NCBI RefSeq assembly: GCF_006345805.1
Contig: NC_043003.1
Coordinates: 70,246,001 to 70,310,000, forward strand
Source: Octopus sinensis
Lineage: Eukaryota
Length of the DNA: 64,000 bases
Reading direction: 5' to 3'
How positions within the stretch are numbered: position 1 is the first letter of the stretch; every line of letters starts with the position of its first letter. Of the stretch, positions 1,764-62,583 are shown one piece after another. Under the pieces are notes generated by a model. The model was not told the DNA's origin. It did not search any database and worked only from the letters and a program-made list of their open reading frames with translations. The position numbers and the translations under genes were made by a program.

Positions 1764-3295
1764 TCATATGTATCTAAATGATAAACGTCCAGAAAGGGAG
1801 TGTGTTACATATCCCAGGGCCCCAATGATTACAGGCATAAACCTGAACTTGTACTCTGGATAGAGTAACTGCTGATTTCTCAATAGTTCAGCATAGGTGT
1901 TCTCTCTTTCACTGATCTTCAGTTTTATGTTAACATCCGCTGGGCAGCTGATTTCCACAATTGTGCACAGTTTCTCTTCTGTATCCCAAATCATTATATC
2001 AGGTCTGTGCTACTTACATGTTATTGATGTCTTCACAGGGACATTCCACCAGTACTCCTTTTTATTATGAGTGGCTACGGCTTCTACCATATTGTGGGTA
2101 CTTATTTCTTCGGAGATATCGACGGATTTCATTATCGAGTGTTCTAGCAACAACATCATGTCTCATCAGTAGATAATACCGTGATGACATTTTCAGACAA
2201 CTGCTAATGATGTGGGTCATATATTCGGTGTCAACTCCACAAAGTCTGCATCGGTTGTCATATTTTATTGCTTTTTCTGCATCTCCATCCCTTTTGTGCA
2301 TGAGGTACTTTGTTGACATTTCCTGTTCCTGTATTGCAAACGCATAGCCTTCATAGTGGAAGGTAGTAATCCGGTTATTGGTCCATGATAGACCACTCTG
2401 ATGATCAATGTTGCTATCATCTCGGAGCTTTCTATTAACATATCCATGAATAGTCTTCTGCTCATATATACTCATATATACTCATCCTTTCATCTAATGA
2501 TATGTTGCGGGTGAGCCCTGCGGTTTCTTTGGGCATGTATTTAAGGTTATCAGAGAAGGAATGCTGCTCAAGGAGATGCCTTCCTGGTCTTATAATATTA
2601 TCACCCTCATATATGTTTACTTGGTCAAGGGATGCACTTCAACACTTGGTGGTTAAAAGATATTGCCGAAGGGATATGATACGACATTCAAAGGCATTTT
2701 GGATCGATGTTAAACCTCTACCGCCTTGTTTCGTTTTAGGTAGATGCGGTCTACGTCATTGTTTATGTGGAAATTATGTGTGCTTGTTAATATTTTTTGG
2801 GGGTTTCACATCAATGGCTCGGATCTCATCAAGTGCCCAATCAAGTAGCCCAAATGTTGGCATGAGTACTGGCACTGCAAACGCATCGTGGGCCACTGTT
2901 TTATTGAATGCAGAGAGTGTTCTGAGGTCTAAATTTTCTTTATTCAGCTGTAATATTCTTTAGTGACGCGTGTTGTTACAGGTGCCATTGTAAGATATGC
3001 TTTCATCCACTCCTAGATACCTGTAACATTCCTCGTCAGATAAAAGGGAAACAGTGAAGTCATTGATGGGGATGCTGCTAGTCTGGTTTACAGTTTTCTC
3101 CCTTTTCACAACCATATAACGACATTTATCCTGACCAACCTCCAACCCTACATCCTTTGAATCCTTTGAGAATGTTGTAACTAGGTCAAGGCTCTTTTTC
3201 ATCTCACGCATATTCTTTGCATAAAGTTTTAAATCATCCACAAAGAAACAGTATTTAATTTTGGTATTCCTGTTTCCTTGTGAACCAGTGAGATA
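1764..3295 (-). mobile_element. Degraded R4/Dong-like LINE: RT C-terminal half, CCHC knuckle and restriction-like endonuclease
   Basis: MDDLKLYAK (RT catalytic motif, 2960-3241), YRYLGV, CRLCGVDTEYMTHIISSC...RHDVVA (2065-2475), HRPDIMIWD...VEISCP...PVIIGALG (1764-2040). Stops and frameshifts are present. Confidence 0.88.
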
Positions 3296-8019: not shown

Positions 8020-8054
8020 GTTTTACGTTTCGAGCGGAGCTCTTCGTCAGAAAC
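8020..8054 (-). ncRNA. Minimal type I hammerhead ribozyme motif in a PLE-like terminal repeat (repeat approx. 7915-8225)
   Basis: Minus strand reads GTTT-CTGACGA-A-GAGC tcc GCTC-GAAA-CGT-A-AAAC: 4-bp stem I, canonical core with one extra A, 4-bp stem II, palindromic ACGU stem III, GUA cleavage triplet. Confidence 0.65.
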
Positions 8055-9529: not shown

Positions 9530-11775
9530 TAAAACTTAGATATGTTTCGACCAAAGATTGGTCCAGGCCATGTCTAACTTAATAGCACCACCTGATAGGA
9601 TTATCTGAATCCTGTTTAAATCAAGTTTTGTTTATGGTCCATTCAAGTAGTGAGTTTTTGTTGGGTGAGTTGTATCCAATTATGGGTGGCTTATCTGGTA
9701 TTCCTTGCAGGAATCTATCCAGACTCCGTTTAAAGTTGATGGGATCCTTTTCCTCTTTGATCTCTTTCGGGACAATGTTAAATAGGACAGGGCCTGTTGA
9801 GAAAAAGAAATTATGTTGCAGTGTACATGTATGCTGTGATCTTGAATTGGGCAGGGGACGTATGGCCCGTGGTCCCAGTCTTGGATGAACCTTGAAGCTA
9901 ATGTTCAGGTCGTTTGGGCAAAGTTAGCGGTATATTCTCCACATCGTACAAATGACGTACCGCTCACGGCGACGCTGGAGAGAGTAGAGTTTCAAGGCTT
10001 TAAGGCGGTCCCAATAATCGAGAGCAGCCATGTCTTCAATTCGTTTAGGGAGTGCTCTCTGGGGTGATTCAATCCTCGAGATGTTTGTCTTGTATGGGGA
10101 GACCACAGTGGGCAGCAGTTTTCAAGGTGTAGCCGTACAAAGGAAAAGAAAAGTGGTATGATGACACCTTGTTCTCTGGACCGGAAAGTTCTTAAGATCC
10201 AGGAACTCATCCTACGAGCTATATCGACCTTATTGTTGATGTGTGCACTCCAACTGAGATCGTCATCAACAATTACACCCAGGTTTCTGATATTGTTAGA
10301 GGCTGTGAGCGGTTCCCCTGAAGAAAGAGAGTATGGCTGTTTTAGTGAGGAATTTCTTCCAAAATGCACCAGCTCAAATTTTCCCTCGTTCAGTTGCATT
10401 TTGTTTCTGTCTGCCCATTGACTCACATCATATAGATCAGACTGGAGTTGAGTTCGGTCTGCTTCTTCATTGACGATTTGCTGGAGCTTAGTGTCATCAG
10501 CAAATATTTTCACTTTGCAGTAATGTACGACACTGGAAAGGTCGTTTATGTAAATTATAAAGAGTAGCGGGCCCAAGACAGTCCCCTGGGGGACACCGCT
10601 GGTGACTTTTGCTGGGCTTGAGTGGACTCCATCAACTATAAAATGTTGTGTTCTATTCGCTAGGAAATACTTAATCCAGTGTAGAAGTTTTCCACGGATT
10701 CCAACATTTGCCAATTTTGAGAGTAGGATATTATGGTCTACCCTATCGAACGCTTTACTGAAGTCAAGATATATGACATCAGAGTTCGAACCTGTTCCCA
10801 AGGCTTTGAGTATATCTTCAATGTGGAGTAAGAGCTGTGTTAGACAGTCCCTGCCACAGCGAAAGCCATGCTGATTTGCATTTAGGAGTGTGTGGGTCTC
10901 CAGGAAGTCAGCTATCCTTGATCTTAACACTCTTTCAAACACTTTAATGATGTGGGAGGTGAGTGAGATTGGGCGATAGTTGACTGCGAGGGATCTGTTT
11001 GCCTGTTTGAAAACTGGGATGACTGACTGGGATAGAAGCTGTTTCGGTACATAACCTGAGTCTAACGAATTTCTCCAGAGGTTGGTCAGAGGGACTGCAA
11101 GTTGGTGTCTACATTCCTTCAGGAGACTAGCGGGGAATCTATCAGGGCCTACAGCAGAATAATATTTGACCTCATTTATTGCTGCTATGATGTCAGTGGC
11201 AGTGAAGGTTATGTCTGAGATTTCGTTCGCTTCTCTTACGTCAAATACAGTGGGAACACTAACGACAGAGCAGTATTGTTTCTGCAGTATTTCTGCCATT
11301 TCTTTAGCATCGCGTTGGGGAATGCCGTTATCATCAATCAATGGCCCAATGGGTGAGACAGTGGTTCTATGCTTATTTGCATAAGAATAGAACACTTTTG
11401 GGTTGTGTTTGATGTTTTTGATTACCCACTGTTTCTCCACAGCTCTTTGATTTTCAATGGAGGTTTTCATGTCGGTCTGCAGATGAAGTTTTTCCAGCTC
11501 TAGCCTTTTCATTGTTATTGAATGTGGATGTTGTATGTGGGAATATTTTAATTGGTTGATTTTTTTTATTGAGTCTTTTGATGCACCTGATGAGTGTTTT
11601 TTTCTTTTTAGGGAGCCGGTTTCTGTTTGTGTTAGTAGATTTCGTGGGAGCATGTTTAGAGCATGTATAGGTGACAATGTTCTCAAAGTGCTGCCGTGCG
11701 GTCTCAATATGGGTGGAATTGAGAGTAAAAGACCAGTCGATGAAAGACAGATCCTTTCTGATTGCTCCAAATGGC
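9530..11775 (-). mobile_element. 5'-truncated CR1/L2-group LINE with uninterrupted RT domain
   Basis: YRPISLTSHIIKVFERV, NQHGFRCGRDCLTQL, YLDFSKAFDRVDH, GVPQGTVLGPLLFIIYINDL, IFADDTKL in ORF 9992-11815. The C-terminal DYWDRLKALKLYSLQRRRER lies in a shifted frame. No endonuclease domain is present. Confidence 0.95.
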
Positions 11776-11777
11776 AT

Positions 11778-11837
<60 letters not shown>

Positions 11838-17764: not shown

Positions 17765-18745
17765 ATGGAACCAACTAAGGTTTTTAACGATTCAAGGGAG
17801 AAGAAAAAAGAAAGTGAAAGAGAGAGAGGGAAAAGCGGGGGAGAAAAGAGGGAGAGGGAAAGCATGAGAAAGAGGAAGACGAAAGAGGAGAGAGCTAAGT
17901 GTGGAGCCAACTAACGGTTTTAACGATTCAAGAGAGGGGAAGAAAGAAAGAGAAAGAGAGGAGAGAGAGAGAGAGGGGAAAGTGTGGGAGAAAAAGAGAG
18001 AGCGAGGGAAAGCGTGAGAAAGAGAGAAAAGAGAGAGAGAGAGAAGACGAAGAAGGAGAGAGCTAAGTATGAAACCAACTAACGGTTTTAACGATTCAAG
18101 AGAATAGAGGGAAACAAAGAAACAGAGAAAGACAGAGGGTAGAGAAAAAGAGAGGGAGAAAGTGAGAGAAGAAGTGAGAGAGGGAAAGCGTGAGAAAGAG
18201 AGGAGAGAGAGAAGACGAAGGAGAGAGAGGGAAAACGTGAGAAAGAGAGAGAGAGAGAAGGAGAGGAGAAGAGAGGGAGAGGAGAAAGAGAGGGAGACGA
18301 GAATAGAGAGGGAGAAAGTGAGGGAGAAAAAGAGGAGGGAAAGCGGGAGAAAGAGAGAGAAGGAGTGAAAGAGAGAGTAGCTGAAGGAGAAAGAAAGAAG
18401 AGGAAGAAGAGAGAGAAGACGAAAAAAGAAGGAGAGAGAGAAGACGAAGAAATGAGAGAGAGACAAAGGAGAGAGCGAGAGAAAGAAAGGGAAAACGCGA
18501 GAAAGCGAGAGGAGAAAGAGAGAGGGAGAAGTGAGGGAGAAAAAGGAGGGAGGAAAACGTGAGAAAGAGAGGGAGAAAGAGAGAGGAGTGATAGAGATAG
18601 AAGCCGAAGGAGAAAGAGAGCAGAGGAAGGAGAGAATACGAAGAGGGAGGAGAGAGAGAGAGGGAAAACGTGAGATAGAGAGAAGGGGAGAGAGTGAAAA
18701 GAAGGAGAGAGAGAAGGAGAAGGTGGGGAGAGCAAATAGGAAATA
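17765..18745. repeat. ~1-kb polypurine (GA-rich) tract with three embedded ccaactaacggttttaacgattcaag motifs
   Basis: The motif occurs at 17771, 17907 and 18074; the rest of the plus strand is nearly all A/G. Confidence 0.92.
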
Positions 18746-42689: not shown

Positions 42690-43340
42690 CGTCTCGTACG
42701 TTCTGAGTTCAAATTCCGCCGAGGTCGACTTCGTCTTTCATGCTTTCGGGGTCGATAAATTAAGTACTGGGGTCGATCTAATCGACTGGTCCCCTCTCCA
42801 AAACTTCTGGGCCTTGTACCTAGTGTAGAAATGAATATTTTAAATTCCGCCGAGGTCAACTTTCCCTTTCATCCTTTCGGGGTCGATAAATTAAATACCA
42901 GTTGCGTACTGGGGTCGATCTAATGGACTGTCCCCCCCCCTCTCCAAAAATTCTGGGCCTTGTACCTAGAGTAGAAAAGAATATTTTAAATTCCGCCGAG
43001 GTCAACTTTCCCTTTCATCCTTTCGGGGTCGATAAATTAAATACCAGTTGCGTACTGGAGTCGATCTAATCGACTGGGCCCCCCCTCTCCAAAAATTTTG
43101 GACCTTGTGCTTAGTGTAGAAAAGATTATTTTAAAGACAAGCTGGCAGAAGCGTTAGCACGTTGGACGAAATGCTTAGCAGTATTTCGCCCGTCGCTACG
43201 TTCTGAGTTCAAATTCCGCGGTGGTCAACTTTGTCTTTTATCCTTTCCGGGTCGATAAATTAAGTACCAGTGAAACACTGGGGTCGATGTAATCGACTGG
43301 TTCCCTCCCCACAAGTTTGTGACCTTGTGCCTCCAGTAGG
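42690..43340 (+). repeat. Head-to-tail array of SINE A 3' modules (~143-bp unit)
   Basis: aaattccgccgagg...tagaaa(a/t)gaatatt is repeated three times, followed by a further SINE copy. Confidence 0.88.
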
Positions 43341-48392: not shown

Positions 48393-48589
48393 TTTACACT
48401 ATTTACATTATTTACATTTGACGGATACTTGTCCTCATATCGTTTGTTGTTAACACAACGTTTCGGCTGATATACCCTCCAGCCTTCATCAGGTGCCTTG
48501 GGGAAATTTCGAACCTGGGTTTCTCATTCCTAAAGTATTTTCCGATGTTGTTGTTGTTGTTGTTGTTGTTATTATTATTATTATTATTA

Positions 48590-52681: not shown

Positions 52682-52779
52682 ATATGCCCACGGTCATATG
52701 GCGTATTGATTAAGAGCGCGGGCGACTAACCCCAAGATTCAGAGTTCGATTCCAAGCAGTGACCTAAATAATAATAATA

Positions 52780-52843
<64 letters not shown>

Positions 52844-52998
52844 TGACAACATTGAAAAATACCTTGGGAGTGAGAACCCAGATTCGAAATTTCCCCATGA
52901 CACCTGATGAAGACTGGAGGGTATATCAGCCGAAACACTGTGTTAACAACAAACAAGATGAAGTCAAATATCCATCAAATGTAAATAATGTAAATAAG
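52682..52998 (+). mobile_element. Second tRNA-head/(AAT)n/hammerhead-tail SINE copy (ribozyme decayed)
   Basis: Colinear with 48393-48711; here gaaacgtt has become gaaacact and ggctg has become gactg. Confidence 0.8.
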
Positions 52999-56200: not shown

Positions 56201-56299
56201 AGAATTAAAGAATATATAAATATATATATGTGTGTGTGTGTGCGTGCTTGTGTTTGCGTGTGTGTGTGTATTCTTTTATCTTTCTATATATATATATAT

Positions 56300-56536
56300 A
56301 TAATAGTTATCGCCATACTAATATGGCATTCTTATAAAAATAAGAATAAAGCTGTCCGCTTATTAGCTCCATGAGGCCATCGCCTTAAGTTAGCTATTTG
56401 ATACACAAACTGTATCCATATAACCTTCGAACAAGGGAGGTCAGTCGCTCCACACTACTTGACCGGCAGCTACAGACGCGTTTCGGGGTATTGCCCCTTT
56501 TCAATGCAGCGTAGCCAGCCAGTAGGTGTCGCTTCT
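56300..56536 (-). repeat. PLE-like terminal repeat unit, interrupted by the Tx1-like LINE (continues at 61913-61969)
   Basis: Reverse complement of 62257 to about 62495. Confidence 0.9.
56463..56518 (-). ncRNA. U3-A8 variant type I hammerhead ribozyme motif
   Basis: CTGGC tac GCTGCA-TTGAAAA-GGGG caata CCCC-GAAA-CGCG-T-C-TGTAGC t GCCGG: two-part stem I, 4-bp GC stem II, palindromic ACGCGU stem III, GUC triplet. Confidence 0.72.
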
Positions 56537-56772
56537 AAAATCTTTATTATGATTATAAAAATCTTACAGAGATAGTACATTACAATACAAAACATAATTA
56601 CAAAAAGTTTACGTTGTTCGTTTGATATTTACATATGTTGATTATTGATTTTGATACTAGACTTTACTTTCTCCTTTTTTTTAAAAAATTAAAAATGATT
56701 TTGGCCAGCTAGGTATATCACAGTCAGGATTCTTACCCGACAGCCTAAGAGCCCAGAGACTATTTTCTCCCT

Positions 56773-59700
56773 TCATGATGACCAAGCAGGGTTACTCACA
56801 CCCACCTTTTTTATCACATCATTCCATCGATTCACATACTTTTTCTGTGTCAGGTTCCTCTTCTCTAAATCCATCTTGCTCTTTAGATGGTATCTGAAGT
56901 ATTTTAACATACCATATCCAGAGACAAAGGTTCCTGACACCAAACCTTCCAATCTAGTTCTCCACACACACTCTTTCAGTACTGCCACCGTACAGTGAAA
57001 ACAAGCCTCACCTTCCTTTGAGAGTCCAGCTGGCGGTATCATCTTTATTATAGAACCAGCCGATAGCTGTACTCGTCCCAGATGCGACAACACGTGTTCT
57101 ACGTAACTTATTAAGCCTGACAGCTCCTGACAATGTACAAAAGCGTGCTGGACGGTTTCATCGTCCAACCCACATCTTGGACATGTCGGTGGCACTGATA
57201 TTCCATGCCTATATAACTTATCGCGAACAGGTAGAGCATTCCTATAGCACTGCCAAGTCAGGGATTTTTGGTAATTGTCCAAATACCCCGGCTTGAAAGT
57301 CTTCTTAAACAGGTCGGATAGTTGATCCTCATCGAACCCCAGAGCCCCTCTTAGGACGTCGTCATTTTTTGCCTCTACCATCCTTCTATAAAATGTCGAG
57401 GTGGTATTCCCGCAGCCGGCTTTGCCTATCTTGTGGATCAGCCAGAGTGCCTGTCGGCACTCTTTCTGCCATAAAGTCAGGTTCCGTCTTTTATGAAACC
57501 GGGTTTAAATCTCTCCATAGAGTCCGGTTGCGGGAAGAAATTATCTGCCAGCGGACTCCACACCTTATCACCTCCAGGTGAAACCAGAGATGTCTCAGTC
57601 TCAGCGCATGCCTGCGCATCATTAACCAAGGCATCCCCAGCCCCCTTTAGTGGTTCCTGGCAACACACGGAGCGCCTTACAAGTGGCTTTCCTCCCTTCC
57701 ACAAAAAGCGGAAAAGGAGTCGATCCAACTTGCTTAGCCACAAATCGGGGGCAAGGCACGACAGTCAGGCGATAGGTGATTACAGATGCTATAAACACCT
57801 GTACCACCTCCGCCCTCCCTTTCAAGGAAAGATGCCTTCCGGACCACTCCCGAACTATGGCTTCTACCTTGGTCACTACCTCGCTCCAATTTTTCTCCGT
57901 CTGGGAGTCTGAACCAAACCAAACTCCAAGCAATTTAACAGGACCATCTGTCCAGTGTCCAACAACACTGGACGATATCGGCTTGTTCCTCCAGGTGCCG
58001 AGGCGCAAACCAGTGGACTTGTCCTTGTTAACTTTTGCCCCAGCCACCGCTTCGTATCTTCGGAGAGCACCTTCTACACAAGTTAGTTGTGCTTCGTTGG
58101 ACACGATGAAGGTGACGTCATCCGCATACGCAGAAACAGACTTACCGCATCCGATTTCATTAGGATTGCATCTCACCGTCTCCAACTCCCGCAGCAATGG
58201 CTCAAGAGCCAAAACGTACAGGAGAGGGGACAAGGGACATCCTTGACGAACTGAACGCTTAATCGAAAACGGTTCCGTTAAGTAACCGTTTATCTGGACT
58301 GTGGACTTGATACCGCTGTACATAGCTGATATCCACCCGCGAAAGTCAGGACCTAGCCCAGCCGCTTCGAGAACCGTCGCCAGGTACTGATGATCTACCC
58401 TATCAAATGCTTTACTTTGGTCTAAATGGACCAATGCCCCTCCTTTGCCGGCTAATTGCCCAACCCTGTCTATAGTGTAGCGTAGAAGGTGAAGATTATC
58501 TTCGATCGACCTGCCTGGGATTGCACATGTCTGTGCCCGCCTTTCCGACAAGTTTTTCCATGACGACCTTCAACCTTTCTGCTAACACCTTGGCCAAAAT
58601 CTTTAACTCTACATTAAGTAGAGTTATGGGCCTATAATTACTAATATTATCCCCCTTGCTCGGGTCTTTCTGGATCAGCGTCACAACTCCCCGGCTCACA
58701 GAACTGGGAATCCTCCCATTCTGTTGCCAGTTTGCGTAGACGCTTGCCAGTATGTCCCCGAACAAGTCCGGCATACAACAATAAAACTCATAGGGCAGAC
58801 CATCCAGTCCCGGCGACTTTTCCCGGGCGCATTCATTCAGCCAAAACCCCTCTTACCTCCGCGGGAGTAATCGGTCCTTCACAGCGTTCAGCTCTGCTTG
58901 GCGAGAGCCGAGGCCCACCAGCTAGGAAGTTCTGTAAGTCCTCCCCTCGCTCGAGTGGATCGCCCTCCCCAAACAACCGAGCGAAATGCTGTTGAAAGAC
59001 CTTCTGTATCTCCTCCTGTCCATAGATTTTGCGTCCCTGTTCGTCAGTTAAAGACTTAATAGAGGACTTTTTGCCCTTCTGACTCTCCACACGACGTGCC
59101 CATCCGGCAACATAATACCTTCTCGTTTCACTGCACGTAGCTTAGCTCTGACTCTACATCCTTCATGCTTGGCATTGAGGTGACGGTACAAGATCGTTCT
59201 CTCTGCTAACACTCTAGATGCACAGCCAGATCCCATTGCCTCGTCTAAGTTCTTAACTAAATCCGCCCTCTATTCTAGTCCTATCTAAACTTAGCTGGTT
59301 GCTAAATCTAATGGACTCCAAACGGATGGCTCTTTTGAGGGCGATCCACCATCTATTATTAATGATGGTTCCACATAATGCCCTCTGGACTAATTCCATA
59401 ATCCGGTTACGGAAAGCTTCACAAGCCAAAATAGACTTGTTCATTTTCAGTATCCGGGTCCCTGTCTATGGCATTTATCTACATGTACCTCACACGTCAC
59501 TAATTTGTGATCCGTGTAAGGCACAATACAAAATTGTGGACAGCTAATGCTATCCTATCTCGTTCTTTAACAAATACCCTATCTATATACGATCTGCGTG
59601 AGCCGTCATTGTTACTCCACGTCCACTGTGGAATGCTCGGCTCATCCATTCGAACCGATCTACTAGATTAAAGCTCGTCAGTAGACCCTTAAGGCAAGGA

Positions 59701-60172
59701 TTCCCCCTTCTATCAGACGAGCCCACACTATCTATCCGCGCATCGATGATAGTGTTGAAATCCCCTACCAATACTACCGTTTTAGACGTCACTAGAAAAT
59801 GCTCCAAGTTCCGATAAAAACCAGTCTGCCCTACCCTCATTAGGAGCATAAACAGCTACCAACCTGAAGGACTGCTTACTCACGTGAGTTACATCGAGGA
59901 CAACCAGCCTACCTTCTGGGTCCATAAAGACAGTACTTACCTGTAAGTCCAAGTTCTTCCTGATAAGGACTGCCACGCCTGCACTCCTCCTCGGCTAGGA
60001 GAAATAAATTTCTCGTAACCATTGAGAAGATGCGAGAACGCTTGGGTTCCTCTCATCTTGGACTCGGTGACAATGGCTACATCTATTCTGTGTGTCCTGA
60101 GGTCGTCCAGCAAGCAAGCCTGTTTCCATTTCGACCCCATTCCCGCACATTTATACAGCCCAACTTAATCAT
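56773..60172 (-). pseudogene. LINE ORF2 (APE endonuclease, RT, zinc-binding C-terminus), about ten frameshifted pieces
   Basis: MIKLGCINVR start at 60172; VTES; VAVYAPN; VLVGDFN; YRPITLLNVELKILAK; LDQSKAFDRVDH; VRQGCPLSPLLY; AYADD; CPRCGLDDETVQHAFVHC. Confidence 0.93.
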
Positions 60173-60371
60173 CGATGAATGAAGAAAGTTTGTTACTTAC
60201 GGTTGTGAGAGGGAGCATGGCAGCTTTTGTCTGCCTGCCTCCCCCACACTCTCCGTTGTTGCTGGGCATTTAACCGGCGTTGCCACTGGGCTCTGGGATG
60301 GAGTGGCTGCCGGGCTAATATTCAATTTCCAGCTATCACCTCTTGTGTGACATCTTTAATCAGGTTGTCCC

Positions 60372-61746
60372 TCACGTGTAGTTGGAATAGTCTCTCCTTC
60401 CATTCCTCCTCTCCAACCTCGCATACCTCCAATCCGGTTTTTTTTCCGATGATTTGAAACATTTTATGTTTGGTTTCGCCTTTATGTACCAAACTACTCT
60501 CTCGTTTTTTGTGTTATAAGCAATGCACCTATCGGTTTTTTTGAATCCTTTTAAAGTTGGGGGCTGGGGTTTAATGAAATGCTGGCCTACAAAAGTAGTG
60601 CCAGCGGGTGGGATTGGATAATTTTTTTGTGTTGTTCTTGTTCTTCTGCGTTTTTTTTCTTTTGTTTTGGGTGGGGAGTCCGGGGTATTGGATTTCTTCC
60701 TTTTGTTGGTTACAGTCGTATATTCCATTACTTCCAGTTCTTTTCCATTTGATAAAATATTTTCCACCTCGTTTTCGTTTTCGCTTTGTTTTCCATTCAT
60801 TTTCTTTTCCTCCTTTTGACTTTCATTTTGCTTTTTCCGGGTATTCTCTTTTGTTGTTGCTGTGATGTCTGCTTTGTTCTCCACAGCGGTTTGAATGGGG
60901 GCATTAACGGGTTTTTTCTTTTTGCACTCTGAGCGGACGTGACCCTTCTGCCCACATTTGAAACATCTGGGCCTACGTCCCTCCACCGATACCCGCGCAG
61001 TGTGTCCATCCCCCACGAAGACCCTGTCTGGCAAACTCTCCTCCAGCGTTGCATTGTCAGCTTGAACGATCATTTCAAGCTGCTGACTTTCCAAAATTTG
61101 CCTCTTTCATCCTCATGTTTAAAATGTTTAATTTCTCTTCTACGTCGAATACGACCGCTGTTGCTGCCCACATTACATTACATCGTAACCTGTTGGTATA
61201 TCCTCTATTGTTATCTTAGCTGTTCTGCGCCCTAAGTACGTGGGCAGCAACAGGATGTCTGCACTCTTCAACGTTTGAGTTGAAATTTCCTTCGCTATGC
61301 TAGCCGACTCGAAATGCGCTTCAATAGTAGCGCTTCTCACTCCTCGGCCAACATAGCGAACCTTGTTCCAATTGGTGCCATGCACCGTTCTACCAATTCA
61401 TTTCTTACATCTGCAATCTTTTTTTCCTTAATATTATATACCTTATAAATTACCGTCTTCTCACTGATGATTGCTTGTAAGGTGTCAGGGGCGGTATTAT
61501 TCTCGTTTCTTCTCCATTCCTTTGTATGAACTTTCTGAACTTGAAGAGATCCTCCATTGTTACTTCCAGTTCTATAACATTGCCTCCAACGGCTTCCGAA
61601 AAACTTTGTTTTCTCCTTGTATCCATTTGATTTCCATTTTTTATAACTTCTCCCATCTCGGGAAAATCAGAATTTGACGTTAAGTCAAGATCCATATTAA
61701 AATGCAAGTGACTTGTCACAAGAGACAAGATAAAAATTAATTCCAC
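60372..61746 (-). pseudogene. LINE ORF1 (gag-like, CCHC zinc knuckle), frameshifted
   Basis: RPRCFKCGQKGHVRSEC in ORF 60372-61094; upstream pieces are 61173-61385 and 61450-61746. Confidence 0.85.
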
Positions 61747-61912
61747 ACTGAATTAAAGTTCATATATAAAAAGAAATTTTCTACCCCGAAGGGCGAAAAT
61801 TACTTTGTTCCACAAGTTAATACTCCAAAAATTGTACGTTTAAATCCAGAACAGAACGAACTAACATAACAGCTTACAGCGTAAAATAATCCGACGTAAT
61901 CCAAGGAAAAAT

Positions 61913-62552
61913 CAGTAGGTGTCGCTTCTGACAATCTCTGTTCGATGGTTTTATTTACCTAGTTTCGGTGGAATACATCCACTTGTTTTCAATAATAGAA
62001 ATATTAAAATTACTAAGTCTCTCTAAAAGAGAACAGCGGCAGCGTTCCCGGAAAATAATAGTTATCGCCATACTAATATGGCATTCTTATAAAAATAAGA
62101 ATAAAGCTGTCCGCTTATTAGCTCCATGAGGCCATCGCCTTAAGTTAGCTATTTGATACACAAACTGTATCCATATAACCTTCGAACAAGGGAGGTCAGT
62201 CGCTCCACACTACTTGACCGAAACTAGGTAAATAAAACCATCGAACAGAGATTGTCAGAAGCGACACCTACTGGCTGGCGACGCTGCATTGAAAAGGGGC
62301 AATACCCCGAAACGCGTCTGTAGCTGCCGGTCAAGTAGTGTGGAGCGACTGACCTCCCTTGTTCGAAGGTATATGGATACAGTTTGTGTATCAAATAGCT
62401 AACTTAAGGCGATGGCCTCATGGAGCTAATAAGCGGACAGCTTTATTCTTATTTTTATAAGAATGCCATATTAGTATGGCGATAACTATTATTTTCCGGG
62501 AACGCTGCCGCTGTTCTCTTTTAGAGAGACTTAGTAATTTTAATATTTCTAT

Positions 62553-62555
<3 letters not shown>
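61913..62555. repeat. Cluster of inverted PLE-like terminal repeat units
   Basis: 61992-62220 is inverted against 62328-62555 (about 228 bp, near identical); 61930-61969 is inverted against 62217-62256. Confidence 0.93.
62275..62330 (+). ncRNA. U3-A8 variant type I hammerhead ribozyme motif (second copy)
   Basis: Same fold as 56463-56518; core at 62289-62295, predicted cleavage after C62318. Confidence 0.72.

Positions 62556-62583
<28 letters not shown>

What the first reader, a model, noticed from the sequence alone, without database searches (positions are those of the whole stretch)
56463..62330. Full-length Tx1-like LINE inserted immediately upstream of a hammerhead ribozyme in a Penelope-like terminal repeat, with an empty target in the same window
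Seen: a 5376-bp two-ORF LINE (56537-61912, minus) is flanked by the exact 17-bp duplication cagtaggtgtcgcttct. An uninterrupted copy of the same repeat (62219-62555) shows the empty site at 62257-62273, within 2 nt of stem I of a hammerhead fold. LINE and ribozyme are on the same strand, so read-through from the LINE would meet the predicted GUC cleavage site about 60 nt past its 3' end. Established: the Tx1 clade includes target-specific elements that insert into other transposons, U2 snRNA genes and tRNA arrays. Inference: this may be a site-specific LINE that parasitises hammerhead-bearing PLE repeats and perhaps uses the ribozyme for 3' processing. One insertion alone cannot show specificity.
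Basis: partly seen in the sequence, partly recalled or inferred. Interest (0 to 1): 0.82.

Follow-up and report, generated by a model that had tools for sequence, protein, structure and literature searches.

The report
Broken LINE nested in hammerhead-ribozyme repeat
A 5.4-kb L1/Tx1-type jumping gene, with its reading frames already broken, has landed inside one unit of a small Penelope-style repeat that carries a hammerhead ribozyme. This looks like an ordinary transposon-in-transposon insertion, and nothing here shows that the element aims at the ribozyme or uses it.

Summary
The physical observation holds. A 5376-bp insert (56537-61912, minus) is flanked by an exact 17-bp duplication, and an uninterrupted paralogous site lies at 62257-62273.

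The insert is an L1/Tx1-group LINE. It has a CCHC ORF1 and an ORF2 with APE, RT and zf-RVT domains, and its best solved relative is human L1 ORF2p. It is not an intact two-ORF element: ORF2 needs at least 10 frame corrections and ORF1 is also split. Clade assignment to Tx1 could not be tested.

The host repeat is a 337-nt unit carrying a well-formed type I hammerhead with a U3-A8 core, a variant documented in Penelope-like elements. Rfam misses it, but Rfam also misses a canonical-core control in the same window.

The repeat cluster has a PLE-type layout: a partial tandem plus a head-to-head inverted copy, both ending in (TA)n. It contains no PLE ORF. Its units are about 99-100% identical, so the LINE was probably already defective when it inserted.

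Targeting and ribozyme-assisted 3' processing remain untested, because no other copy of this LINE or repeat could be found. Indirect evidence leans against both: related LINEs sit in unrelated flanks without hammerheads, and only one weak-helix-III ribozyme lies downstream.

The parts
56537..61912 (-). L1/Tx1-group LINE copy, 5376 bp. Structurally full-length (5' UTR, ORF1, ORF2, 3' UTR) but with broken frames.
   Evidence: It has no other copy in the window.
60375..61752 (-). ORF1 remnants, split over three frames. One CCHC zinc knuckle lies at about 60918-60968.
   Evidence: frames; zf-CCHC 3.1e-05, with no Transposase_22 hit.
56773..60164 (-). ORF2 remnant, spread over 11 segments in three frames (at least 10 frame corrections). 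APE is at about 59503-60164, RT at about 57919-58650 and zf-RVT at about 57124-57270.
   Evidence: stitching. Exo_endo_phos 6.3e-13. RVT_1 7.6e-24 and zf-RVT 3.9e-11; human L1 ORF2p 1.1e-51, against R2 8.6e-23.
56537..56772 (-). AT-rich 3' UTR ending ...AATAAAGATTTT, with AATAAA at 56543-56548. There is no poly(A) tail.
   Evidence: Related LINEs also end at AATAAA plus 4-14 nt without poly(A).
56520..56536 (.). Target-site duplication, 3'-side copy relative to the LINE sense strand.
61913..61929 (.). Target-site duplication, 5'-side copy relative to the LINE sense strand.
62257..62273 (+). Uninterrupted paralogous ('empty') target site. It reads AGAAGCGACACCTACTG on the + strand, which is the ribozyme sense strand here (one search lists it as a minus-strand match to CAGTAGGTGTCGCTTCT), and forms the 5' arm of the distal extension of hammerhead helix I.
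56300..56519 (-). Repeat unit U-A, distal part (positions 56-274 in ribozyme-sense numbering). It contains the LINE-side hammerhead.
61930..61967 (-). Repeat unit U-A, proximal part (sense positions 1-38).
61968..61991 (-). 24-nt spacer between the tandem units. It may be a PLE-type 'tail' or part of the roughly 362-nt tandem period.
   Evidence: The 'tail' interpretation is an inference from PMC8557442.
61992..62220 (-). Repeat unit U-B (sense positions 110-337). It is 5'-truncated about 9 nt past the predicted cleavage site and has no hammerhead.
   Evidence: It is 166/166 identical to U-A.
62219..62555 (+). Repeat unit U-C, a complete 337-nt unit. It is inverted head-to-head against U-B with a 2-nt CG overlap.
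   Evidence: The fold z-score is -7.15.
56469..56510 (-). Hammerhead motif downstream of the LINE; the extended stem spans 56461-56520. C17 is at 56475, 62 nt past the LINE 3' end.
   Evidence: The sequence is identical to the U-C ribozyme except for G to U in the internal loop of helix I.
62283..62324 (+). Hammerhead motif in the uninterrupted unit. Helix I is GCUGCA/UGUAGC, followed by a 3x1 internal loop and a 7-bp closing stem (62273-62332). The core is UUGAAAA (U3-A8). Helix II is GGGG-CAAUA-CCCC, followed by GAAA. Helix III is the palindrome ACGCGU. C17 is at 62318.
   Evidence: U3-A8 covariation is documented in PLE hammerheads (PMC4209133).
56285..56299 (.). (TA)n abutting the 3' end (CTATTAT) of the minus-strand tandem array.
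62556..62577 (.). (AT)n abutting the 3' end (CTATTAT) of the inverted unit.

Best explanation
This is an ordinary nested retrotransposon insertion, built in two steps.

1. A non-autonomous, hammerhead-bearing Penelope-type repeat integrated into a (TA)n microsatellite. It is retrozyme-like or solo-pLTR-like, with a unit of 337 nt and a tandem period of about 362 nt. Integration produced the typical PLE product: a partial tandem plus a head-to-head inverted copy, with both 3' ends primed on (TA)n.

2. Shortly afterwards an L1/Tx1-group LINE RNA was inserted by APE-nicked, target-primed reverse transcription. The site is in the 5' arm of the ribozyme's extended helix I. The bottom-strand nick is 5'-CTTCT^GACA-3' and the second nick lies 17 bp away, which gives the 17-bp duplication.

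The repeat units are still 99-100% identical, while the LINE carries at least 10 ORF2 frame disruptions. The LINE RNA was therefore most likely already defective and was mobilised in trans by an active relative.

The shared orientation and the closeness to the ribozyme are most likely coincidence. They have no demonstrated role in targeting or RNA processing.

Shown: the insertion, the duplication, the empty paralog, the domain content, the broken frames, the hammerhead-shaped motif and the cluster architecture. Inferred: the order and timing of events, trans-mobilisation and PLE-mediated origin of the cluster.
For: - Exact 17-bp duplication and empty paralog.
- APE, RT and zf-RVT domains with a CCHC ORF1; L1 ORF2p is the best solved relative.
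- ORF2 is in 11 frame segments. One break is an 8-nt imperfect duplication, not a homopolymer slip.
- U-A versus U-B is 166/166 identical, and restored U-A versus U-C is 273/275.
- The cluster is a tandem plus an inverted copy, with (TA)n at both outward ends. This matches published PLE insertion architecture and microsatellite bias (PMC8557442).
- Related LINE copies in another assembly (about 40-55% amino-acid identity) have no hammerhead nearby. At least two sit in unrelated flanks, one with an ordinary 13-19-bp duplication.
- The LINE UTR ends share no similarity with the repeat.
- L1-Tx1 and Penelope families are both abundant and recently active in cephalopods, so nesting is expected (PMC13282606). 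Cephalopods are the likely source clade, because the nearest named homolog is from a cuttlefish.
Against: - Only one copy of this LINE family could be examined, so targeting is neither shown nor excluded.
- Many Tx1-clade families do target other transposons or satellites (PMC4494074).
- Two copies of a related LINE share about 250 nt of 3' flank, a 118-nt satellite-like unit. This could mean target preference or 3' transduction in this lineage.
- The stitched ORF2 contains no in-frame stop, which is somewhat unexpected for neutral decay. Local assembly indel error therefore remains possible.
Confidence: 0.7

Rival explanations
1. The LINE family is target-specific. Its endonuclease, or that of its active partner, recognises the 17-bp region in the extended helix I of this hammerhead repeat family. 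This would parallel Tx1L in Tx1D or Tx1-Mar in Mariner-N4_AMi.
For: - Tx1-clade elements often target other TEs, satellites or small-RNA genes (PMC4494074).
- The insertion is precise, full-length and in a multicopy element.
- Two related LINE copies share one satellite-like 3' flank.
Against: - There is a single insertion only.
- Relatives L001 and L008 sit in unrelated flanks, and 48 kb or more of related loci contain no well-formed hammerhead. The relaxed scan gave one weak, non-palindromic hit, about 6 kb from the LINE in L007.
- The nick site CTTCT^GA resembles generic L1-type pyrimidine^purine cleavage.
- Two other units of the same repeat, within 700 bp, are unoccupied.
- Clade membership in Tx1 is unverified.
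Confidence: 0.13
2. Read-through LINE transcripts are trimmed by the downstream hammerhead. This would leave a 62-nt tail of target sequence that defines the RNA 3' end. The tail might also guide the next insertion by annealing to a new repeat, in the way R1/R2-type co-transcription and read-through do.
For: - The ribozyme is on the same strand, and C17 is 62 nt past the LINE end.
- The target-site duplication keeps the ribozyme and nearly all of its extended helix I intact downstream of the LINE.
- AATAAA lies only 6 nt from the LINE end, so transcripts must extend into the flank.
- A shared 250-nt 3' flank in relatives may indicate read-through or 3' transduction in this lineage.
Against: - Only one hammerhead is on that strand, because U-B lacks it.
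- Helix III is 2 bp and palindromic. That class is reported as nearly inactive as a monomer and needs dimers (PMC4209133; PMC7229834).
- Relatives form the same AATAAA-proximal 3' ends with no ribozyme downstream.
- The LINE copy here is defective.
- There are no RNA data.
Confidence: 0.05
3. The LINE is actually intact and very young, and the frame breaks are local assembly errors in a repetitive region.
For: - All disruptions in the stitched ORF2 are frame changes, with no nonsense codon in 1113 codons.
- The flanks and the duplication show essentially zero divergence.
Against: - Break points are not at long homopolymers, and one is an 8-nt duplication.
- Another LINE in the same window keeps a 607-codon uninterrupted ORF. 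That argues against a uniform indel error rate of about 1 per 340 bp.
Confidence: 0.1

Closest known systems
Tx1-clade target-preferring LINEs: Tx1L in the piggyBac-type Tx1D, Tx1-Mar in Mariner-N4_AMi, Tx1-9_AMi in Harbinger, Keno in U2 genes (Kojima & Fujiwara 2004; PMC4494074)
   Same: It is an APE-type LINE of the L1/Tx1 group sitting inside another mobile element, with a clean target-site duplication.
   Different: Those families are defined by many copies at one site, whereas here there is one copy. RT phylogeny against Tx1 references was not possible. A hammerhead or PLE repeat has not, to my knowledge, been reported as a Tx1 target.
Minimal and canonical type I hammerheads of Penelope-like elements (Cervera & de la Pena 2014, PMC4209133)
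   Same: - Type I topology, with a 6-bp helix I and a 4-bp helix II carrying G10.1-C11.1.
- A very short palindromic helix III (ACGCGU), which implies action as a dimer.
- The U3-A8 core covariation reported for Cercyon-related motifs.
- Paired motifs on opposite strands a few hundred bp apart.
   Different: - There is no RT/GIY-YIG ORF between the repeats.
[quoted passage not shown]
- Activity is untested.
Animal non-LTR retrozymes (PMC7229834; bioRxiv 10.64898/2026.07.22.740005)
   Same: - Unit of about 340-360 nt with low GC content and a type I hammerhead.
- Head-to-tail arrangement.
- Strongly structured unit RNA (z = -7.15).
- Proposed derivation from PLE pLTRs.
   Different: Only about 1.5 tandem units plus one inverted unit are present. 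No two hammerheads lie in tandem on one strand, so this locus cannot release a monomer circle by itself.
R2, RTE and L1Tc elements with HDV-like ribozymes, and R1/R2 co-transcription with the target (Eickbush & Eickbush 2010; cited in PMC4209133 and PMC4494074)
   Same: They are the precedent for the idea that a self-cleaving ribozyme trims a LINE transcript that is co-transcribed with its target.
   Different: Those ribozymes belong to the element itself and process its 5' end. Here the ribozyme belongs to the host repeat, lies 3' of the LINE and has no shown role.
L1 3' transduction and trans-mobilisation of defective copies
   Same: The AATAAA signal lies at the very end, so read-through into the flank is likely. 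The defective copy probably inserted with the help of an active relative.
   Different: There is no poly(A) tail. The 3' end is defined a few nt after AATAAA, as in its relatives.

Membership tests
L1/Tx1-group non-LTR retrotransposon | N-terminal apurinic/apyrimidinic-type endonuclease in ORF2 | tested here: met
   Exo_endo_phos 6.3e-13 on the stitched N-terminus.
L1/Tx1-group non-LTR retrotransposon | RT domain closest to L1-type RTs | tested here: met
   RVT_1 7.6e-24. Human L1 ORF2p scores 1.1e-51 against R2 at 8.6e-23.
L1/Tx1-group non-LTR retrotransposon | C-terminal Cys/His zinc-binding domain after the RT | tested here: met
   zf-RVT 3.9e-11, with the motif CPRCG...HAFVHC.
L1/Tx1-group non-LTR retrotransposon | Separate upstream ORF1 (nucleic-acid-binding) | tested here: met
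   ORF1 remnant with one CCHC knuckle and no Transposase_22 match. The frames are broken.
L1/Tx1-group non-LTR retrotransposon | Intact, potentially autonomous coding capacity | tested here: not met
   ORF2 needs at least 10 frame corrections and ORF1 is split.
Tx1 clade (as opposed to L1 proper) | RT-domain phylogeny grouping with Tx1L, Keno or Kibi | not testable with these tools
   No Tx1 reference sequences were reachable, and the named hits were uninformative. There is only a lead: L1-group LINEs of cephalopods are catalogued as L1-Tx1 (PMC13282606).
Target-specific LINE | Recurrent insertion of independent copies at the same target sequence (>20% of copies; PMC4494074) | not testable with these tools
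   There is one copy in the window. No protein is more than 69% identical. Metagenome and viral collections returned nothing.
Hammerhead ribozyme, type I | Conserved core (C/U)3-U-G-A-N-(G/A)8-A ... G-A-A-A ... U-H17 | tested here: met
   The core reads UUGAAAA ... GAAA ... UC, with the U3-A8 pair. That natural covariation is documented in PMC4209133.
Hammerhead ribozyme, type I | Three helices around the core, with helix I open | tested here: met
   Helix I is 6 bp, then an internal loop and a 7-bp stem. Helix II is 4 bp with G10.1-C11.1. Helix III is the ACGCGU palindrome. The descriptor gave 0 hits in 100 shuffles, and the fold z-score is -3.77.
Hammerhead ribozyme, type I | Match to curated Rfam hammerhead covariance models | tested here: not met
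   There was no hit at gathering score or at E<=10. A canonical-core minimal hammerhead at 48452-48497 is also missed, so the test lacks power for this class.
Hammerhead ribozyme, type I | Compensatory changes across homologous copies | tested here: inconclusive
   Only two near-identical copies exist. Their single difference falls in the internal loop of helix I.
Hammerhead ribozyme, type I | Self-cleavage | not testable with these tools
   This needs in vitro transcription of monomer and dimer constructs.
Penelope-like element (autonomous) | RT plus GIY-YIG ORF between pseudo-LTRs | tested here: not met
   No such ORF lies in or near the cluster. The other RT in the window (9992-11815) is a FADD-type LINE.
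PLE-mobilised non-autonomous repeat / non-LTR retrozyme | Hammerhead-bearing unit in a partial tandem with an adjacent inverted 5'-truncated copy, and microsatellite insertion | tested here: met
   The layout is sense 110-337, a 24-nt spacer and sense 1-274 on the minus strand, with an inverted full unit. There is a 2-nt junction overlap, and both 3' ends read CTATTAT followed by (TA)n. Compare PMC8557442.
PLE-mobilised non-autonomous repeat / non-LTR retrozyme | Two or more hammerheads in tandem on one strand, allowing release of a unit-length RNA | tested here: not met
   Each strand carries one hammerhead. U-B starts 9 nt past the cleavage site.

The most novel reading that the evidence does not exclude
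An L1/Tx1-group LINE lineage that homes to a defined site in the extended helix I of hammerhead-bearing PLE or retrozyme repeats. Read-through transcripts would be cut by the host repeat's ribozyme. That would leave a 62-nt target-homologous 3' tail that anneals to the next repeat and guides target-primed reverse transcription. A LINE would then be exploiting another retroelement's ribozyme.
Probability: 0.06. Interest if true: 0.75.

Novelty: new member of a known kind. Interest (0 to 1): 0.25.

Why it matters
If the insertion is what it appears to be, it is a routine nested-TE event. Its value is as a cleanly resolved example:
- a dated, dead-on-arrival LINE insertion;
- a well-formed U3-A8 hammerhead repeat, probably in a cephalopod-type genome;
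- a textbook PLE-type tandem/inverted integration into (TA)n.

It also shows that Rfam models miss this class of hammerhead, so such repeats will go unannotated in invertebrate genomes.

It would only be a new LINE target class if many copies of this LINE proved to sit at the same 17-mer. A new use of a hammerhead would additionally need RNA ends at the predicted cleavage site.

Tried and rejected
- **Rfam.** I searched at gathering score and at E<=10 on the whole window, on 500-800-nt slices and on an 86-nt slice. There was no hammerhead hit. This is not evidence of absence, because a canonical-core control also fails.
- **Other copies of the repeat, target or LINE.** I looked in the window, in metagenome contigs by ribozyme pattern and by protein, and in viral contigs. 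Nothing was found. The genome-contig collection holds only bacteria and archaea, so I did not scan it.
- **Protein searches.** I used the RT fragment and the stitched ORF2. The best hits were 55-69% identical, so the source genome and this LINE family are not in the collection. A flank census was therefore impossible.
- **Cluster look-up for names or organisms**. It returned no names.
- **PLE ORF in the window.** The 607-aa RT at 9992-11815 is a FADD-type LINE, only 28% identical to the LINE studied. It is not a PLE.
- **Target-derived sequence in the LINE UTRs.** A word-7 BLAST found only chance 7-10-mers.
- **Assembly error as the cause of the frame breaks.** The breaks are not at long homopolymers, and an intact 607-codon ORF lies elsewhere in the window. 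I kept this only as a minor rival.
- **Chimeric retrocopy by template switching.** I rejected this because the exact 17-bp duplication and the seamless restoration of the unit fit simple insertion.

Full report
**Observation**

The 17-mer CAGTAGGTGTCGCTTCT occurs exactly three times in the window: 56520-56536 (+), 61913-61929 (+) and 62257-62273 (-). Dinucleotide shuffles gave none.

Between the two direct copies lie 5376 bp (56537-61912). The bases just outside the duplication differ on both sides, so the duplication is exactly 17 bp.

With the insert and one duplicate removed, the flanks form a continuous copy of the repeat. That copy aligns 273/275 with the uninterrupted unit at 62219-62555. 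An insertion with a target-site duplication and a paralogous empty site is therefore real.

**The insert**

Translating the minus strand gives LINE proteins, but not two open reading frames.
- ORF1 remnants run from about 61752 to 60375 in three frames and contain one CCHC knuckle.
- ORF2 runs from 60164 to 56773 but is spread over 11 segments in three frames. It needs at least 10 frame corrections.
- The break points are not at long homopolymers. One is an 8-nt imperfect duplication.

Stitched, ORF2 is 1113 aa with three domains:
- an APE endonuclease (Exo_endo_phos 6.3e-13);
- an RT (RVT_1 7.6e-24);
- a C-terminal zf-RVT domain (3.9e-11).

The best solved relative is human L1 ORF2p at 1.1e-51, against R2 proteins at about 1e-22.

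This places the element in the L1/Tx1 group. I could not test whether it belongs to the Tx1 clade proper, because no Tx1 reference sequences were reachable.

The nearest proteins are only 50-69% identical. Most come from one ENA assembly, and the only species-level name among them is from a cuttlefish. Cephalopod L1-group LINEs are catalogued as L1-Tx1 (PMC13282606). That is a lead, not a test.

The element ends ...AATAAAGATTTT with no poly(A) tail.

**The host repeat and its ribozyme**

The window holds three copies of a 337-nt unit and no others. On the minus strand the order, in ribozyme-sense numbering, is:
1. unit positions 110-337 (U-B, 62220-61992);
2. a 24-nt spacer;
3. positions 1-55 (the start of U-A, ending in the upstream copy of the duplicated 17-mer);
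4. the LINE;
5. positions 39-274 (the rest of U-A).

A complete unit (U-C, 62219-62555) lies head-to-head on the plus strand, with a 2-nt overlap at the junction.

Both outward 3' ends stop at CTATTAT and run into (TA)n. Partial tandems, an adjacent inverted copy, short extra 'tails' and a microsatellite bias are the published hallmarks of Penelope-like element integration (PMC8557442). There is no RT/GIY-YIG ORF, so this is a non-autonomous cluster, retrozyme-like or solo-pLTR-like.

The hammerhead has these parts:
- helix I GCUGCA/UGUAGC, continued past a 3x1 internal loop by a 7-bp stem that starts at G62273;
- core UUGAAAA;
- helix II GGGG-CAAUA-CCCC;
- GAAA;
- helix III, the palindrome ACGCGU;
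- C17 at 62318, or at 56475 in the LINE-side copy.

A descriptor I wrote finds it on both copies. It also finds one unrelated minimal hammerhead at 48452-48497, and nothing in 100 shuffles of the window.

The U3-A8 pair in place of C3-G8 is a covariation reported for PLE hammerheads (PMC4209133).

The 71-nt region folds as predicted (z = -3.77). The whole unit is strongly structured (z = -7.15). The 17-mer target forms the 5' arm of the distal extension of helix I.

Rfam reports no hammerhead at any threshold. It also misses the canonical-core motif at 48452-48497, so its silence is uninformative for this class.

**Timing**

U-A and U-B are identical over 166 nt. The restored U-A differs from U-C by one substitution and one 1-nt indel, and U-B shares that indel. 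The duplication is 17/17.

The cluster is therefore very young, and the LINE insertion is younger still. At least 10 ORF2 frame breaks, plus further breaks in ORF1, are more than that age allows. The LINE RNA was therefore most likely already defective and was mobilised in trans.

One caveat applies. The stitched ORF2 has no in-frame stop, which leaves local assembly error as a minor alternative. However, a 607-codon uninterrupted ORF elsewhere in the window argues against a generally high indel error rate.

**Targeting and ribozyme use**

No second copy of this LINE or this repeat could be obtained. The decisive flank census was therefore impossible.

Indirect evidence leans against both ideas:
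- Related LINE families fetched from another assembly also end a few nt after AATAAA without poly(A). The relaxed hammerhead scan of their loci gave only one weak, non-palindromic hit, about 6 kb from the LINE in L007.
- Two of those copies (L001, L008) sit in unrelated flanks. L008 has an ordinary 13-19-bp duplication.
- Two other related copies (L004, L007) share about 250 nt of 3' flank that contains a 118-nt satellite-like unit. This could be target preference or 3' transduction, so the lineage is not proven to be indiscriminate.
- The inferred first nick here, 5'-CTTCT^GACA-3', resembles relaxed L1-type pyrimidine^purine cleavage.
- The LINE termini share nothing with the repeat.
- A read-through transcript would carry a single hammerhead with a 2-bp palindromic helix III. 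That class is reported to be nearly inactive as a monomer and to need dimers (PMC4209133; PMC7229834).
- U-B, the neighbouring unit on the same strand, lacks the ribozyme.

**Verdict**

The most likely explanation is an ordinary nested insertion of a defective L1/Tx1-group LINE into a young PLE-type hammerhead repeat cluster (confidence 0.7).

Site-specific targeting (about 0.13) and ribozyme-assisted 3' processing (about 0.05) remain open but unsupported.

Both the LINE family and the repeat family are new members of known kinds.

Noticed in passing
window 48452-48497 (-), with a decayed copy at 52685-52996 (+): A second, unrelated minimal hammerhead motif. It has a CUGAUGA core, a bulged A before helix II, a 6-bp helix II, a palindromic ACGU helix III and U17. 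It lies just 3' of a tRNA-like SINE head and (ATA)n/(AAC)n runs. The 87%-identical copy at about 52.9 kb has lost the core (ACGU changed to ACAC). Rfam does not detect it.
   Followed up: partly
window 8020-8054 (-): A weak hammerhead-like match (CUGACGA, 4-bp helices, ACGU) in a low-complexity context. It may be chance.
   Followed up: no
window 9992-11815 (-): An uninterrupted 607-aa RT ORF from a different, FADD-type LINE. It is only 28% identical to the LINE studied and is flanked by (TG)n/(TA)n. It is not a PLE.
   Followed up: partly
window 2065-2475 (-): A 136-aa ORF with a weak zf-RVT match (E = 0.0014). It is probably the C-terminal remnant of another L1/Tx1-group LINE.
   Followed up: no
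window 56285-56299 and 62556-62577: Both outward ends of the repeat cluster stop at CTATTAT and abut (TA)n. This suggests integration into a (TA)n microsatellite, with both target 3' ends used as primers.
   Followed up: partly
window 42764-43135 and 17866-18220: Two short tandem arrays: 146-nt units in 2.6 copies at 90% identity, and 168-nt units in 2.1 copies at 81% identity. Their nature is unknown.
   Followed up: no
L006 1-16307 (ENA ERZ21867824 ctg108305l): A related LINE family (about 40% amino-acid identity) forms a head-to-tail tandem array with a 6432-bp period at 99% identity. ORF1 (643 aa) and ORF2 (1158 aa) are intact.
   Followed up: partly
L004 15784-16043 and L007 3333-4291: Two copies of a related LINE share about 250 nt of 3' flank. 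In L007 it continues as 7 copies of a 118-nt tandem repeat. This is either satellite targeting or 3' transduction.
   Followed up: partly
L008 6363-6394 and 10090-10115: A 5'-truncated copy of the related LINE with a 13-19-bp target-site duplication (GCAGAC)ATTCATACACAAG in an unrelated flank. This is ordinary L1-style insertion.
   Followed up: partly
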